Shown here piece by piece: positions 14,903 through 23,099 of a DNA stretch of 64,000 nt (positions are counted from its first letter, which is position 1; every line of letters begins with the position of its first letter). Source of the stretch: Oikopleura dioica. Lineage: Eukaryota > Animalia > Chordata. The position numbers and the translations under genes were made by a program. The stretch lies in contig OU015566.1 in the NCBI GenBank assembly GCA_907165135.1, positions 7,502,001 through 7,566,000 on the forward strand. The letters run 5' to 3'. The notes below the pieces were generated by a model. That model was not told the origin of the DNA and ran no database searches. It saw only the letters and a list, made by a program, of their open reading frames with translations.

Positions 14903-17034
14903 ATGTCGGAACAAGAGGCGCCGGAACATCAAATTGTGCTTTTTGGAAGGGATACTGAAGGTCTGTTAAGAATCAGGCTTTGTGCCTTAGGGGAGGGCCT
15001 TGTCTTGGTATTTATCCACCGTCAAAATCGTACCTTAGTCAAATTTACAGAAGATCATCGTACAGTATTTGGTTTTACACGTGTGACTGTTTGTGTAAAT
15101 CTGACTGTATTTCGTATCCCTCGAAAAGTAAAAGCCGGCAGCGATCGAGAATGCATAGGCTGCTGCCCCTTCTCGCAGGGCCTCTTCATGATGCTCTGGC
15201 TCAAAGGATCCGTATTCAACGTGACTACGGTCGACAAGGATAGGTGAGTTTCTCTAACCATGGGAACGACGATTATTCACAATCAGAAGCTGGGAAAACG
15301 GTTTCTAATAGAGTACTTCAGCAAGCCGAAAGAACTCGCTGATATTGCGCCCGGGACCTCTACTCCGTTTATTCTCTTTAATAACGAAGTCGTCACCGAT
15401 CCGCCCAAAATTGTTGAATTCCTTGAAGCTCAACTTCAACCACCAAAGTGAGTTACCAACTTTGTTGCCTTCATTGTCTACTTGAAAGTTTAGGTACCCA
15501 AATTTGATGCCAGTCAATCCAGAAAGCATGCTCGCTGGCTTCGAAATCTTCGCCAAGTTTTCCGCGTGGATCAAGGCTAAATTCGACAGCCCAAATTATG
15601 AAAGTAAGTACCCCCCTTTCCAGAGGGTTTTAAAAAGAGTGGTTAGTTTCTTATGTCAAAAAAAATTATCCGTTGTCGAGCAAAAAACTTGTCACATCAA
15701 TGAAATTTTCGTCCATTTATGGTCTTCAAAGAAAGTCCCCTCTTGAGGGAACGGAAAAATTAGCAATGAATCTAGTTCGTGATTATAAGAACATCCCTAC
15801 GCCTTTTAGCGTATTTAAATATCAATTCTAGTTACTAGCTAAAGTTTTATGGTGTTTTGGTTGAATACTGCCCGACTGAAAGTATTAGCCAGGCTTCTAA
15901 ATATTGAGTGCTTTAACACATGATTACGATATAATCAGAGCTTAGTAACTAAGCTTGATCCAAAAGAAAGAGATATAAATATATTCGTGTGATTAAAATG
16001 CTACTTTTATTGTGTTTAGTTTTGTGAGCCCTGAGAGAAGAGGGCTTAAAATAATTCACGTGTGCAATCTAATAATGGGTGGAATTCGTTGATAACATTA
16101 TTGAAATACAACTGAATAAAATGAAAAACAACTATATCAAGTGTTGACTAGATACCCTTATGGTCCCCAATTATAGCTCTAGAAAACGCGCTTTCACGTG
16201 ATTCAGCCCTGGAAAAGCGATTCCTGACACATTTGGCCAAATTTGATGCCTTTTTGAAAATGAACTCCGACCGAAGATTCATCGATGGAAATACGATGAC
16301 TGCTGTTGACTGCAACATCTTACCAAAGTTGCACATTGCTATTGTTGTTGCGAAAGCCTTGAGACAGTTGGATATTTGTCAAGTAAGTAATATAACGAGT
16401 ATAAGCCAGGATTAAAATAAAATTATTCAACCATGATTATTCTTGATTTTATTTCAAAACTGAGTAAAAATATAAGGTGTTTTTGGGTCCAATAACGCCA
16501 TTTCATAAAAAATAAGACAAATAACAAAAAAAGTATGGGAAATATAACTTTTAGTATTTCCCAGGACATAAAAATCGGCATCTTAACCTGTCTCGGTTCA
16601 ATAATGTACCCGTTGCAATCCTGAGAAGGAATTTCTTCTCATTAGAAATCAATCAAGAATACAGTGAATGGTTATAAAGAAACCCCGGGTAAAACAGTTA
16701 CCCTGGCTCCGGAAAGTTTTTATGTGGATTCTTGATAAATAAACCCTTATCAGTAAGGGTTGCAAAGATATATAAATTAAAGGGTATTGCCTCCAATGTT
16801 AAATGCGAGCATGGTTAAGGTCTTAAAATTTGGATTACTAAGATGATGGATGGAAAATACAAAAATAAAAACGTCTGTCAAAAGTTATGGTGTAAATCTC
16901 TTTTTCAGCAATACACTGGAATCGCGCAATACATGGCGAATGCTGCTCAACATGCTGAATTCTCCCAAACCTGTGCGCAGAACGACGAAATCATCTGGTC
17001 CTACGGAGGTCCAAAGCCAAAACTCAAGAACTAA
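14903..17034 (+). CDS. CLIC: Chloride intracellular channel (CLIC/GST-fold) protein
   Basis: [97 protein letters not shown]. The first intron (14946-15128) is GA-AG. Confidence 0.95.
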
Positions 17035-17085
17035 AACCTGAATTTGTCTCCGAATTATCAAATCATGTGAATAAAATGGACTTTT

Positions 17086-19754
17086 TTATCTTGCTTTATT
17101 GACATTGAACGTAAACGTAGGGGTACTCGTGTTATCGGACTTAATTCCAAAGAGAGAACTTCGAAACTCCTTGATGTTGAATTTCAGGAACTTGCGAATC
17201 TGGCGGTGTTTTCTGAAAAAAAATGTTTTTCGGTTGAGCAAAACTAAACTTGCTTGAATGATCTTTCTGAGAATCGTGTCGATCGTTCCGTTCGTTTCAT
17301 CTTTCAGTTCTCGCAGTTGATCGACAGTTTGCTTGAAGAGCGCTGCAAACGGCGAGAGATTAATATCAGAAAGAGAGTTGGAAAAGATCATGAAAATGTT
17401 GGTATCCCGTGGGATGCAGCGACGACGAATTCGCTCCGTTGACTCTGAGGTTTGTTCGATCTCGTCGGTGTCCAGGAGGCACTTAAATCTTTATTAACTA
17501 GCTTGCAGGATGAAAGGAGGAACAAAATATGAGGCCTACGTGTTGGCCGGTAAATATTAGTCTTTTAGCTATAAGATTGATCGTTTTGATCTTTGAAATT
17601 ATCTAATTATTTTTTGCCATCTAAAAAACCGTACAATCGGTCAATAAAACACATTTATGATTTTCATCATGATTTCTAGAGCTCGATTCTCAGCCTTTGA
17701 TTCTAAGCGATACCTGGTTTTTTGGCGTCTTCATCATCCAGCTATCGATAACAAAAAGTTGCGGCTAAAAATATACCCTGATTCAGATCGAGGAAAATTA
17801 TAATTACGATCGCAATCGCCATCGAACTAAACTTCTTGATAAATTTAGAGGGCTCCGCAGTTTCATCGTCACTTCCATTGTTTCCTTCTTTGATCACCCA
17901 GCCATGTCGAGCGTTTTCAGGTGTGATGATGACAATGAAAATTATTTGTGAAATATTCGGTAGGAAGCTCTTTTTCAAAAATGAGCAAAATAGATCTTTG
18001 AAATTAGACTGTCTTTTCGACAATTTTGAATTTTTCAATAAATTTGCTCCTTTTAACTTTATCAAAATTTCCATAAAACTCCACTGCTTTTCGCTTACAT
18101 CCAATTCAGAGCATATGTAGCCGATGCTCTGGAAGACCTAAGACAAATGTTTTCGACGGTGTCTTTCAGCAAAAAGCGAAGGTTCTTCTCTGCGAATATT
18201 ATATACCTCTGTGTAGTGCTTAGCCGCCACTGCTCCGAATTTGTCTCGTACAATCACCACACGTGGGGAAGATCCTGGACGAGTTCCCTTGATGGTTATT
18301 CAATAAATATAAACTCATCTGACCCACTGTACCTTTATCACGATATCTTTTCCTTCGGTTATTTTAATCGAGCTAGCAAGTCGGTGTTTGATTTGAGATA
18401 CTTGGCCGCATTCGTGGCTAAATCCTTGCCGAACAACCTTTGTTTCTTGCAGCGCTTGATTGATTCTAATTATTTATATATAAATTGCATAAGTTATGTT
18501 GCCTGGCACCTGTAGCTAATTTGCTCGACATCAATACTCTCCCCTTTTTGAATCGCTTTTCGATATTCCGTAACCAAAGCATTGCTAAAAGTATTCGGTT
18601 TGATACTGTCCAGAAATTTTAAGGCTTACCAGAAAAGAGAACCGCGATCCATGCTCCGAAGACTTAGTGTATTCTTGACGGTTGAAAAATGAATGAATGT
18701 GTTTTTATCCGGCCGTATTTGGGAAAAGATTTGCGAAAAAAGATCATTCTAAAAATGTTTTTGAAGAGATCTTCTTTCGAAACTTACTGTGTACTGATTC
18801 ATCGACACATTTTCTTGGACTGCTTTTTGAGGAGATTCAACAGGCTTTTCGATGGATGGAATGTCTCGATCTGAAATTTGTTTTTTTTTTTGCTGGAATT
18901 CTTGAGTTTATTTCAAACTTGAGTCCAAAATCGGCAAATTTGTCTGTTCAAGAATTCTCGTCGCATCATCAGAAGTTATCGGATTAATTTGAAATCTTTG
19001 AGCTGAAATCGTCGATGGGATCAAATTTGCTGGTTCGTGGGGCAAACTGTCAAATTGCACAGTTTTCAGCGACTCTTCTTCGGATCCTCGGCAGGCATTC
19101 ACGTAGACAACAAACTTGGTGTCCTTTAGCTTTTCTTGAAGATCTGGTACTCTCATCACCAGGGTGTAAATTTTCGCGAGTCTCCAGGATCGAACTTTGT
19201 GGCCCATCATCTTCAATTTTCTTGAGCTTCAACAACAACATGAGCTTTCTACCTGGAGATACTCTCCCTTTTGATCATTAGTTCCGTGGCATCCGAAGTA
19301 GAGCATCACAAAGTCAATCTTTTCATTGCAACTAAAGTTCATCAAGTGATGAATAATGTCATCTTCAATTCTTCCATATTCCTCAACCAACTCTTTTCGC
19401 CTTTCGATCTTGATTATATTCTCCCCTTCTTAGGGTTTTTTAAATCAGTCTTACCGACTAACACTAATCTTACGTACAATCAAATTTATCCTAGAATCCA
19501 AATGTTTTCTAAAAGTATAAACTCGTGACAAAAACAGGAATGGAATTCATCAAGCCCCACAGATGTTCAGAGTCAGCTGTAGCTCCGTCTCGCTTAGAGA
19601 TGTCATTGTAAATGAGACTTTATGAGTTGAGCTTTGGGCTTTATTTCCATTCATATAGTAAGCTTTTCCATGAAATAGGAAGCTAAAAGTAAGAAGCTAA
19701 ATATCTGTTTTAAACTCAACAAATTCCTTTTCGTTTCTCTTGAGTTAGTATCAT
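17086..19754 (-). CDS. Tandem caspase: N-terminal caspase domain with intact His/Cys dyad fused to a C-terminal pseudo-caspase domain
   Basis: Domain 1: LIYNDISKRDGATADSEHL; FVMLYFGCHG (His codon 19286-19288); KFVVYVNACRG (Cys 19091-19093); IRPDKNTFIHFSTVKNTLSLRSMDRGSLF-CNALV. Domain 2: RVVIVRDKFG...YTEVFQSIGY; IIFIVIITPE; PQLFVIDSW; IPRDTNIFMIFSN...SPFAALF...IDTILRKI. Start codon approximate. Confidence 0.8.
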
Positions 19755-19901: not shown

Positions 19902-21549
19902 TCACGATTGACGCACATTGCCGTCGTTTATTTTTGAAGAACTGTTTGAGGTGTCATGAGTGTGGAACAACTGGCAGGAAAATCAGGAAATCGAGGAAAG
20001 GTTAAAATTCTACGTTGGCGACGATGACTTCCGAGAGAGTTTGCGCGCTTTTGACGAGCTTCGTCTGCTACTCCCGCCAGAGCTGGAGTCTCGGGGATTG
20101 GGGTTGTCGGAGAGTTTTATCAACTGACGCACTTTTTGAACGACGAGTCTAAAAGAATCTCTCGATCTTGCCGTGGATTAGAAGTTTACCTAAGACATCT
20201 AGCACTCTGTTGATTTGTCACTCCGTCCATCGAGAAAGAAAGCCCAAGAACTCCTGGAATAATCAACAGTCCAGCTCCAGAGCGATTCGCTAACCAGATT
20301 CCGTACTTTTCGCACTCTGCCTGGGCTACTCTATCAGCTGCGCAAGCGTTTAAAATTTGCTTCAAGGCTGCCTGAAAATAAATTATAGCAAATCAACTGG
20401 ACATATACTTCTTTTACCTTTGAGGTATCTACAGGGATGATGATTTCTTCCGTAAACGGGCATTTTCCATTATTGGCGAAAACAGCTGCGACTATCGATG
20501 CTGCTTCCGGACTTATTGCCGTCGAACAGAGCTGGAAGTAAAGGTCCAAAATTTCTATACGAGAGCTGTGAGCCCGAAAATGCCATTGATCACCTACCTT
20601 GAACGTTTGCTCCTTGCGGAAAGCAGTCGTTAAATGCCAGGTAGTGAATGAGACCGATCTCTCCGTGAGAATGAAGACGTTTCATATTGTAGCTCCAGTT
20701 ATCACATGCGATTTCTGATTGAGCAGCCATCTTTGAGTAAAACTCATGAATCCGACCCAGTTTTTCTTCAGCAGGAGTGTCTGGAAAAAGCAAGGACGTG
20801 AGCATTAAACCACCACTTCTACATAGTGGATTCCATACTCGCCCATCTAGGAGGTTAATATCGTCAATTACTCTGTTGCGCATAATCATTGATCCTACCT
20901 GAGTGGAGGGAAAATTCATCTCTCTCACGTGGAATGGGTTTTGACGCAAAGAACTTTCCAATCATTTCCGGACCCAGTGTTTCTGTCGCTAGACTGTCGT
21001 AGATTAATTTCCATCGGAAAAAAGGGAAAGCTTACCAAAAGTTTAGTAGGTAGCAAAGTTCATTCAATGGAAAGATATTCGTCTCCGCTTCCCCAAGTTC
21101 TCCAACATTCACTCGTTTTCCGTCGACGGTGCAGACAGATAGAGACCAGTTTGTGACGGAATCAAGCTTCGACAAAATTTGCCTGAAAGGAAAATTATCC
21201 AGGAGGAAGAATATTCAGAGACCTCTTCAGAGGCTTTATTACATTCTGACGACTGCATCTAACAGCCGCAATAAAGATAATTTGTGAGCTCTCTTTACAA
21301 AGCATAATCACGGATAATTAGCGGGTAGAGTTATCTCTTCATTTGTCATGAATGACGGTTTTGTTACCTGCAGGTTTGCTCCAGGGAAACGGCGAACTCG
21401 TCCATGTTATTGAGCAAGGGACGGGGAGGAGTATCGGCTTGAGCTTCGTCGGGAGGACGAGGGGGTTGAGGCAACTCTTCTTCCGACAGATGACCATTGC
21501 TGAGGACAGTTGACGATCGACGACGCTCGGGGGAGCGGACGATGCTCAT
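19902..21549 (-). CDS. Glutaminase-fold protein lacking the catalytic residues (pseudo-glutaminase)
   Basis: NWSLSVCTVDGKR, WNPLCRSGGL, LDLYFQLCST...AAVFANNGKCPFTEE and LLIIPGVLG are GLS-family motifs. The SxxK site reads FPLNELCYLL. Confidence 0.85.
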
Positions 21550-23099
21550 GCTTAGATCAAAAATGATTTGAAGAAAAACAGAGAAAAAATGAATCTATTA
21601 TGTTTGGCACGGCTACTGCAAGAAAAAATTTTTGCTTGATAAAATTATATTCGTACTGAATATTTTCCTGTATAAAACAGTATAACTTAAATCTCTTATT
21701 ACCTTTGTCGTCTACTGGAAAATAAATTCTTCATGTTTTCTTCTTTTCAATCTCTCTTTTTTTCCTTGTAACTGAAAATTTACTTGAGCAAAATGGTCAA
21801 AACAAGGCCGTAGTATTTATTCATTCGGGGCTCAAGCGGATGATCGCCATCAGATCAATTTTCAATAAAGTGCTTCTGGCACGGAACCAGGTGTTTCATA
21901 AAATTGAGCACCTTATTATTCTTTCAATAAAATAAAAAACCTTTGAAAGAATCGCAGAATCCTAGAGAAAAAAATTGGGCTGATAAAGACTGGACTTGCT
22001 AGAGGGCGAATTCTCAGAATTCCAGCTATAAATATCGGACTCTAACTCTCTTAAATTTCGTTTAATTACCGCTTCTTCCGAAAATACTCTCACTTTTTGA
22101 GCTGCTGCCAAATATTTCGATTTATGCTTCTTTGATTTTTACTGTTTATAACTCAATTAAATCTCCTTACTTCTTTAATTTACGTCAGCTGCTATAGAAT
22201 AGTCATTAGATAGATTTCTAATAATAATTCGCATCATCTACGTAGTGTCTCAGCCCATATCATCAACTCTTGATAATGCTAATTTGACGATTCCGAATTC
22301 TCATCCTTTTTGAAATTCAGAACAAAGCAAAAACTATGGTCAAATTTGAATTTTTCAAACGACAATTACACTTGGCAATGGTCCGAGTCCCTTTGAAAAA
22401 GACGCCGGAAGATATAAATAGCGACTTTACTACTTTGAACTCGGACAAAAATGACATACTCAGCAATCGAGTGCTCTTTTTATTGAATTGTTAACTTGCA
22501 TAAAAATATCAACCGGATAATTAGCCATACAACTTCACCAGAAAATGAAGATGGAAAAAAATGACAAGTTTTCTTTCCCTTTGAAAGAAAATGATTCGTA
22601 AAATTTCAAACCTTTGAGGAAATTCTTTCTTCTTGACTTCAGATCTCTTTAAAAACGTGTTTATGTGCTCCTAAGTGGGCCAAAGACAAGAACCTGACGA
22701 CAAGGTATGGACAGAAAGGCTCAACTGGCCCCTACGAGTGCGTGCTTTAGGGTGCGAGTTAGTGTGAATTAGCGCTAGTTTCGCCCTGCTCATTGTAAAA
22801 TCCAGCCACTTGAACAAAGACCAAGTCCAACGTGTCCTCGATAACCACCTTTTGTACAAAAAACGCTAAAAATTTCGCTAGATATAAAGAAAAAAAAACG
22901 ATTCTTATAATCAGAGAAGTGTCAAATCATATAACGATTACAATTTTTTTATAAAAATAACTAAAATATCATCTCATTTTCAGTTGAGTTAACACGAATA
23001 GTAATAGAACAAAAGAAACAGCTGCAATTATATAATTTTAATTATCCATGAGATTACATGAGAACCTCTCTTTTGAAGAACACAAATCAACCAGGCATG

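What the first reader, a model, noticed from the sequence alone, without database searches (positions are those of the whole stretch)
17086..19754. Two-headed caspase: an active-site caspase spliced in frame to a catalytically dead second caspase domain
Seen in sequence: domain 1 has every caspase landmark, namely LIYND..KRDG (S1 Arg), FGCHG (His), YVNACRG (Cys; QACRG with Q->N), a long Asp-containing linker (VQFDS, TSDDA, PILDS) and a small subunit NTFIHFSTVKNTLSLRSMDRGSLF. It does not stop there. A 45-nt phase-0 GT-AG intron (18288-18332) joins DIVIK to GTRPGSSPRVVIVRDKFGAVAAKHYTE|VFQSIGY..., which repeats the caspase motif order. In this second unit IIFIVIITPE stands where LSHG should be, PQLFVIDSW where PKLFIIQAC should be (Cys->Trp at 17738-17740), and IPRDTNIFMIFSN...SPFAALF...IDTILRKI forms the small subunit. 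No ATG opens domain 2, and retaining the intron gives an immediate stop, i.e. a single-domain caspase. Established: caspases work as dimers, and caspase-8 is tuned by heterodimerising with the pseudo-caspase c-FLIP-L. Inference: one gene may encode a pre-tethered caspase/pseudo-caspase heterodimer with no CARD/DED prodomain, switchable by intron retention. I do not know this architecture from chordates.
Basis: partly seen in the sequence, partly recalled or inferred. Interest (0 to 1): 0.9.

Follow-up and report, generated by a model that had tools for sequence, protein, structure and literature searches.

The report
Larvacean caspase with dead twin domain
A small planktonic tunicate (Oikopleura dioica) has a conserved cell-death protease gene in which a working caspase is followed, in the same protein chain, by a catalytically dead copy of the caspase fold; corals and mammals have similar two-domain caspases, but with the dead copy in front.

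Summary
Real, with corrections. The window is O. dioica (OKI2018_I69). A 13-exon, 588-aa minus-strand gene (19754-17141, not 17086; the last intron is GC-AG) encodes a prodomain-less caspase (Pfam PF00656 above cut-off; His, Cys and both S1 Arg positions present) followed by a second caspase-fold domain (Atlas TM 0.60-0.63; top 15 PDB fold matches of a homologue all caspase-clan) with His->Pro, Cys->Trp and no S1 arginines. The linker intron keeps its position and phase in four O. dioica lineages, usually with no ATG behind it; both domains are under purifying selection (dN/dS about 0.04-0.11). An intron-free 512-aa homologue (33% identical, probably from a metatranscriptome) carries both domains, with the same Pro and Trp, in one ORF. 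The architecture is known: coral caspase-X and mammalian caspase-16 join a pseudo-caspase and a caspase, and both papers make the c-FLIP analogy, so 'unknown in chordates' is wrong. New: the reversed order (active first) and an apparently independent origin. Intramolecular dimer packing was not shown (pTM 0.35); nothing supports an intron-retention switch. The public OKI model mislabels the gene 'glutaminase'. The scan noted other tandem caspase-fold ORFs elsewhere in this genome (unchecked).

The parts
19720..19754 (-). Exon 1 with start ATG (19754); about 8 residues before strand beta-1, no CARD/DED/pyrin prodomain
   Evidence: In-frame stop 5 codons upstream; block conserved in sister loci; homologue P0021 starts the same way with a stop 8 codons upstream
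19618..19719 (-). Intron 1, non-canonical (TT..AG, or GT..AA shifted by one base); probable reason both public annotations miss the true N-terminus
   Evidence: Same ends in L021/22, L026/27, L030, L036, L039; join inferred, no read covers it
19523..19617 (-). Exon 2: beta-1, loop with first S1 Arg (codon 19592-19590), helix A
19253..19425 (-). Exon 3: catalytic His (19288-19286)
   Evidence: PF00656 match over cut-off; polyA reads of a sister lineage lie here
18919..19210 (-). Exon 4: catalytic Cys (19093-19091, NACRG) and conserved intersubunit Asp site 14 residues after it (codon at 19051)
18788..18870 (-). Exon 5: variable part of intersubunit linker
   Evidence: much shorter in P0021
18333..18748 (-). 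Exons 6-8 (18748-18630, 18584-18510, 18465-18333): small subunit of domain 1 with second S1 Arg (18658-18656) and beta-6
   Evidence: profile A4 matches caspase-7 small subunit, E 0.0086
18288..18332 (-). 45-nt phase-0 GT-AG intron inside the interdomain linker
   Evidence: position and phase conserved in 13 other loci from four lineages, 39-45 nt, sequence free to vary, ATG behind it only in L026-29; used by both public gene models
17808..18287 (-). Exons 9-10 (18287-18207, 18137-17808): large-subunit part of pseudo-caspase; Pro (17921-17919) at the His position; first S1 Arg loop absent
17960..18061 (-). About 102-nt AT-rich insertion in exon 10, private to the window's lineage (exact ends uncertain); in-frame insert or GA-AG intron
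   Evidence: exon 10 is 330 nt in window/L031/L032, 228 nt in all other lineages; GC 0.26; dN/dS about 0.5 on few changes
17714..17764 (-). Exon 11: Trp (17740-17738) at the catalytic Cys position
   Evidence: Trp conserved in all lineages and in P0021; splice to exon 12 seen in 3 polyA reads of a sister lineage
17254..17481 (-). Exon 12: short linker and small-subunit part of pseudo-caspase, second S1 Arg absent
   Evidence: dN/dS 0.04-0.10
17141..17212 (-). Exon 13 after GC-AG intron 17253-17213: beta-6 of pseudo-caspase and stop (17143-17141); AATAAA-like hexamer at 17100

Best explanation
One gene encodes a prodomain-less caspase zymogen with its own pseudo-caspase partner attached at the C-terminus. 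SHOWN: single ORF in a homologue, conserved gene structure, caspase fold of both halves, dyad and both S1 Arg positions kept in domain 1 and lost in domain 2, purifying selection on both. INFERRED: domain 2 folds back over the 15-20-residue linker and pairs beta-6 to beta-6 with domain 1, giving a single-chain heterodimer with one active site, as proposed for caspase-X and caspase-16 and seen between caspase-8 and c-FLIP(L). Cleavage at the conserved Asp 14 residues after the Cys would give p20 plus a p10-pseudocaspase chain; no Asp site is conserved in the interdomain linker, so the dead domain would stay attached and set the activity of the enzyme, replacing the adaptor-driven dimerisation for which this protein has no prodomain. 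Likely origin: tandem duplication in the larvacean NACRG caspase group followed by read-through fusion, independent of corals and mammals (inferred; no tree built).
For: Single chain: P0021, 512 aa, 33% identical over 99% of P0019:341-855, intron-free ORF in a 1808-nt contig of run ERR1719285; neighbouring accessions are Tara Oceans metatranscriptomes (PMC9983209). Linker intron conserved, ATG behind it absent in three of four lineages. Domain 1: PF00656 43.8 bits, cut-off 21.4. Domain 2: Atlas features 0.95 to caspase clusters, TM 0.60-0.63; P0021 domain 2 PF00656 E 0.026; model pTM 0.60, VIA-align top 15 all caspase-clan, c-FLIP(L) 3h13 Z 10.1, rmsd 4.2, 182 aligned, Foldseek E 3e-5. dN/dS 0.04-0.11 in both domains. 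Weak hint: in caspase-3 numbering (my recollection, register fixed by the Gln/Pro motif) domain 1 has Lys at the two-fold position 266, which should disfavour homodimers, and Arg268 faces Glu264 of domain 2; both are Gln in P0021; 266 is a known interface control point (PMC2805924 abstract). A tandem pair of separate NACRG caspases, the closest paralogues of domain 1's small subunit, lies at C2:1.727 Mb.
Against: The two-domain AlphaFold model is low-confidence (pLDDT 44, pTM 0.35), so packing is untested. No read spans the junction in O. dioica. Domain 1 versus domain 2 profile comparison is not significant (hhalign probability 1.3%), so an internal-duplication origin is not shown. Activity of domain 1 is untested; the oxyanion/S1 Gln is Asn. 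That ERR1719285 is RNA is inferred from the accession series.
Confidence: 0.58

Rival explanations
1. Same single chain, but domain 2 works in trans or as a scaffold: domain 1 forms ordinary intermolecular dimers, and domain 2 binds other caspases or adaptors (a c-FLIP-like regulator carried on the tail), or dimerises with domain 2 of another chain.
For: Domain 2 evolves somewhat faster than domain 1 (aa identity 0.79 vs 0.88 between lineages); the genome has at least six other caspase loci it could bind; the caspase-16 paper names intermolecular pairing as an open alternative.
Against: A covalently tethered partner at high local concentration with an intact beta-6 would normally win; beta-6 residues look complementary between the two domains (weak, n=2).
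Confidence: 0.27
2. Domain 1 is not a conventional apoptotic Asp-ase (weak or altered specificity), and the whole protein has a non-death signalling or processing role.
For: Gln of QACRG is Asn, the His motif is GCHG, PDB sequence matches are weak; domain 2 dampens killing in coral caspase-X.
Against: His, Cys, both S1 Arg positions and a hydrophobic-x-x-Asp/Ser linker site are conserved down to 33% identity.
Confidence: 0.11
3. Two separate operon genes, or a gene whose regulated intron retention switches between one-domain and two-domain forms.
For: O. dioica has operons and very short spacers (own knowledge); retention would truncate after domain 1 in every lineage; L026-29 have a Met two codons after the acceptor.
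Against: No ATG in three of four lineages; only 27 nt between the retained-intron stop and the acceptor, with no polyA hexamer; retention outcome varies (stop at codon 3-9, or frameshift and stop at 27-30); P0021 is one ORF; linker codons are conserved as coding.
Confidence: 0.04

Closest known systems
Coral caspase-X (Acropora AmCaspase Xa-d; PMC4715348)
   Same: Two caspase domains in one chain, one lacking His and Cys; cDNA-verified; modelled as a c-FLIP/caspase-8-like pair through beta-6; the dead domain lowers killing in HeLa cells.
   Different: Dead domain is N-terminal there, C-terminal here; reported as restricted to corals; not retrieved by the homologue search with this protein (limited sensitivity).
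Mammalian caspase-16 (PMC12198278, PMC12292325)
   Same: A chordate caspase with a duplicated, catalytically dead caspase-fold domain; same c-FLIP analogy; intramolecular pairing is an open question there too.
   Different: Dead domain is an N-terminal 'prodomain', still clearly similar in sequence to the active domain and without an intersubunit linker; caspase-14 clade. Here the dead domain is C-terminal, very diverged (no significant similarity to domain 1) and stays on the small subunit.
c-FLIP(L)/caspase-8 heterodimer (PMC7586951; PDB 3h11, 3h13)
   Same: Pseudo-caspase with conserved replacements at the dyad (Arg/Tyr there, Pro/Trp here); 3h13 ties for the best fold match (Z 10.1).
   Different: Two genes with DED prodomains recruited at the DISC; here one chain and no DED. 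A tied top Z score is not evidence of orthology.
Separase and CHAT proteases (pseudo-protease plus active protease domain; own knowledge)
   Same: Caspase-clan fold duplicated with one dead copy in the same chain; SAVED-CHAT appears among the fold matches.
   Different: Distant clan CD families, pseudo-domain N-terminal, different specificity and partners.

Membership tests
Caspases (Peptidase C14A), domain 1 | PF00656 match above gathering score | tested here: met
   43.8 bits for P0019:341-602, 46.9 for P0021:1-285, cut-off 21.4
Caspases (Peptidase C14A), domain 1 | His-Cys catalytic dyad | tested here: met
   His 19288, Cys 19093; invariant in all homologues
Caspases (Peptidase C14A), domain 1 | S1 pocket Arg/Gln/Arg for Asp specificity | tested here: inconclusive
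   Both Arg positions conserved by motif and alignment to caspase-7; Gln replaced by Asn
Caspases (Peptidase C14A), domain 1 | Proteolysis after Asp | not testable with these tools
   needs a recombinant assay
Pseudo-caspase (c-FLIP-like), domain 2 | Caspase fold | tested here: met
   Atlas TM 0.60-0.63 for the window's own domain; homologue model: top 15 caspase-clan, Z 8.5-10.1
Pseudo-caspase (c-FLIP-like), domain 2 | Dyad absent while the domain is conserved | tested here: met
   Pro and Trp in all O. dioica lineages and P0021; dN/dS 0.04-0.10. A His five residues past the normal position is Tyr in Bergen and absent in P0021
c-FLIP / CFLAR family | Tandem N-terminal DEDs | tested here: not met
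   no DED or CARD hit, about 8 residues before beta-1
Caspase-X / caspase-16 type | Active and inactive caspase domain in one chain | tested here: met
Caspase-X / caspase-16 type | Inactive domain N-terminal to the active one | tested here: not met
   order is reversed in the window and in P0021
Caspase-X / caspase-16 type | Orthology by phylogeny | not tested
   no coral or mammalian sequence was retrieved; no tree built
Caspase-X / caspase-16 type | Intramolecular beta-6/beta-6 interface | tested here: inconclusive
   two-domain model pTM 0.35

The most novel reading that the evidence does not exclude
A third independent origin of a single-chain caspase/pseudo-caspase heterodimer, and the first with the dead domain on the C-terminus, so that it cannot be shed like a prodomain: an obligate, self-dimerised one-site caspase that needs no adaptor platform and is conserved across distant larvaceans.
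Probability: 0.45. Interest if true: 0.66.

Novelty: new variant of a known kind. Interest (0 to 1): 0.54.

Why it matters
Caspases need a dimer to be active. A natural chain carrying its own dead partner is a clean reagent for a question that the caspase-14/16 review leaves open (PMC12292325): whether intramolecular pairing with a pseudo-domain suffices for activity. Repeated, independent evolution of this design in corals, mammals and larvaceans would point to a general solution to caspase control, here with reversed topology. Practically, the gene is hidden in public databases: the Okinawa model fuses it to the upstream gene and is named 'glutaminase', and the Bergen model skips exons 1-3 and 6-8 and has no Pfam hit.

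Tried and rejected
Exon-by-exon Pfam scans gave nothing; single-sequence and profile searches of PDB sequences for domain 2 gave nothing relevant; the own-genome PF00656 search missed domain 2: it is too diverged for sequence methods. Domain 1 versus domain 2 comparisons were not significant. RNA runs were from a lineage under 90% identical, so no read spans the linker intron; the two Logan contig sets laid behaved like DNA (intron-sized gaps) and were not used as transcript evidence. The JGI metagenome scan gave only more O. dioica loci. The two-domain fold was too poor to judge packing. Weill et al. 2005 on urochordate caspases is not held, so I cannot say whether it lists this gene. Rejected: glutaminase-caspase fusion of CAG5105293.1 (Bergen annotates two genes; P0021 has a stop upstream of its ATG; the model skips conserved exons 1-2); exon 6-8 skipping of the Bergen model as a real isoform (more simply explained by the GG donor of exon 7 in that lineage; not excluded); domain 2 as pseudogene (dN/dS, spliced reads). 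My own joined gene model has no reference, so it was used only inside scripts (frame check, dN/dS, comparison with P0019) and never sent to a search or fold tool; that joined search step was left out, and joined-chain searches used stored database proteins P0019, P0020 and P0021 by id.

Full report
Source. The genome has 64,281,565 bases in 19 contigs, matching the O. dioica Okinawa assembly OKI2018_I69 (64.3 Mb, 19 scaffolds, median intron 49 bp, 11% non-canonical introns; PMC8008620). The public model covering this locus is CAG5105293.1, chr1.g1999.t1.

Gene structure. Reading the minus strand gives 13 exons: 19754-19720, 19617-19523, 19425-19253, 19210-18919, 18870-18788, 18748-18630, 18584-18510, 18465-18333, 18287-18207, 18137-17808, 17764-17714, 17481-17254, 17212-17141. 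They translate to 588 aa with no internal stop; introns are mostly 39-69 nt and AT-rich. About twenty homologous loci from marine metagenomes and the Bergen assembly, falling into roughly four lineages (about 67% nucleotide identity to the window for the distant ones, 91% for the near one), keep every exon boundary and nearly all exon lengths. The RNA-hinted public model agrees with mine at 514 of 515 residues from residue 74 on. Intron 1 is non-canonical and its join is inferred; the resulting N-terminus matches homologue P0021. A 102-nt AT-rich stretch in exon 10 occurs only in the window's lineage and is either an in-frame insert or a GA-AG intron, a type common in this species (PMC7072748).

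One chain or two genes. The linker intron is GT-AG, phase 0 and at the same codon in all 14 loci examined, while its interior varies; the residues after it are Gly-Thr-Arg, Gly-Thr-Thr, Gly-Thr-Ile or Gly-Met-Thr, so only one lineage has a possible start codon. Both public annotations use this acceptor as a cis-splice. The strongest evidence is P0021, a 512-aa protein 33% identical over 99% of the query, encoded without interruption in a 1808-nt contig from run ERR1719285. Neighbouring accessions are Tara Oceans metatranscriptomes, so it is probably a spliced mRNA of another larvacean; library type and species are inferred, but one ORF for both domains is shown either way. PolyA reads from a diverged O. 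dioica lineage fall on both domains, and three join exon 11 to exon 12 at the predicted splice; none could be laid across the linker. The retention switch has no support: any short intron truncates when retained, and the outcome here differs by lineage.

Domain 1. PF00656 scores 43.8 bits against a cut-off of 21.4. His (19288), Cys (19093) and both S1 Arg positions (19592, 18658) are conserved down to P0021; the Gln before the Cys motif is Asn. A hydrophobic-x-x-Asp/Ser site 14 residues after the Cys is conserved in all homologues, the same spacing as the caspase-8 linker site (own knowledge). There is no prodomain. Its closest paralogues in the genome are two adjacent, separate NACRG caspases at C2:1.727 Mb.

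Domain 2. Sequence searches fail, but the ESM Atlas places residues 603-855 of P0019 with caspases by features (0.95, 181 of 256 shared) and by structure (TM 0.60-0.63). The P0021 half has a weak PF00656 hit (E 0.026), keeps a recognisable GKPKLF motif before the Trp, and its model (pTM 0.60) has caspase-clan proteins as the top 15 of 48,161 PDB representatives, with c-FLIP(L), caspase-8 and insect caspases tied at Z about 10 (Foldseek agrees). Pro stands at the His position and Trp at the Cys position in every homologue; both S1 Arg loops are gone. dN/dS is 0.04-0.10, close to domain 1's 0.04-0.11 (the window-L022 domain 2 row rests on a mis-mapped exon and is ignored). It is single-copy in the genome. 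It is a long-conserved pseudo-enzyme, not decay.

Mechanism. Established: caspases are active as beta-6/beta-6 dimers and c-FLIP(L) gives caspase-8 a one-site heterodimer (PMC7586951). Inferred here: domain 2 is the built-in partner. The linker of 15-20 residues has no conserved Asp, so after cleavage of the intersubunit site the pseudo-domain would stay on the small subunit. The beta-6 residues look complementary between the two domains and change together in P0021, a weak hint from two sequences and recalled numbering. The direct test failed for lack of alignment depth (pLDDT 44, pTM 0.35), although secondary-structure order is caspase-like in both halves. Whether domain 2 activates or restrains domain 1 cannot be told; in coral caspase-X the dead domain restrains. 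I put the single-chain active-plus-pseudo architecture at about 0.93 and the intramolecular mechanism at about 0.58.

Comparison and novelty. Acropora caspase-X (PMC4715348) and mammalian caspase-16 (PMC12198278) both have an inactive and an active caspase domain in one chain, and both papers draw the c-FLIP parallel; caspase-16 is a chordate example. In both the dead domain comes first. I found no report of the reverse order or of this O. dioica gene, but the 2005 urochordate caspase survey was not available and the coral paper notes unverified multi-domain predictions in nr. The homologue search found no full-length relative outside O. dioica and P0021, with limited sensitivity, so the range in other tunicates is open. 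Verdict: real and well supported; a new variant of a known kind; interest 0.54.

Limits of procedure. My joined gene model was used only in local scripts and not sent to any search or folding tool; that step was left out. Searches across exons used stored proteins by id.

Noticed in passing
window 19930-21734 (-), P0019 residues 1-340: Upstream glutaminase-like gene (PF04960, 96 bits), wrongly fused to the caspase in CAG5105293.1; same neighbour in the Bergen assembly. A conserved block near 19821-19800 with an AG may be a trans-splice acceptor, which would make the caspase a downstream operon gene (inference).
   Followed up: partly
window 16152-16412 and 16903-17035 (+): Convergent CLIC/GST-like gene (Pfam on the Bergen orthologue); its last conserved exon ends about 100 nt from the caspase stop, so the 3' ends may overlap. 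Well covered by polyA reads.
   Followed up: partly
window 19719-19618 (-): Intron with one non-canonical end (TT..AG or GT..AA) conserved across all lineages seen; the exon 7 donor is GT in the window's lineage but GG in the others.
   Followed up: partly
L002/L007, G000:C2:1.727-1.730 Mb (-): Two adjacent single-domain NACRG caspases, each with its own stop and long N-terminal extension; closest paralogues of domain 1's small subunit; a possible model for the pre-fusion state.
   Followed up: partly
L003/L008/L009, G000:C5:6.76-6.77 Mb; L011, C2:4.857 Mb; L001; L004: At least six further caspase loci in the genome pass the PF00656 cut-off, several with unusual active-site motifs.
   Followed up: no
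window 19291-19286 (-): A Cys directly before the catalytic His is conserved down to P0021; possible redox or metal control (speculation).
   Followed up: no
P0020/P0022 (CBY31797.1, CBY22215.1): Bergen models join exon 5 to exon 9, giving a protein with no Pfam hit; probably a prediction artefact, but an exon-skipping isoform is not excluded.
   Followed up: partly
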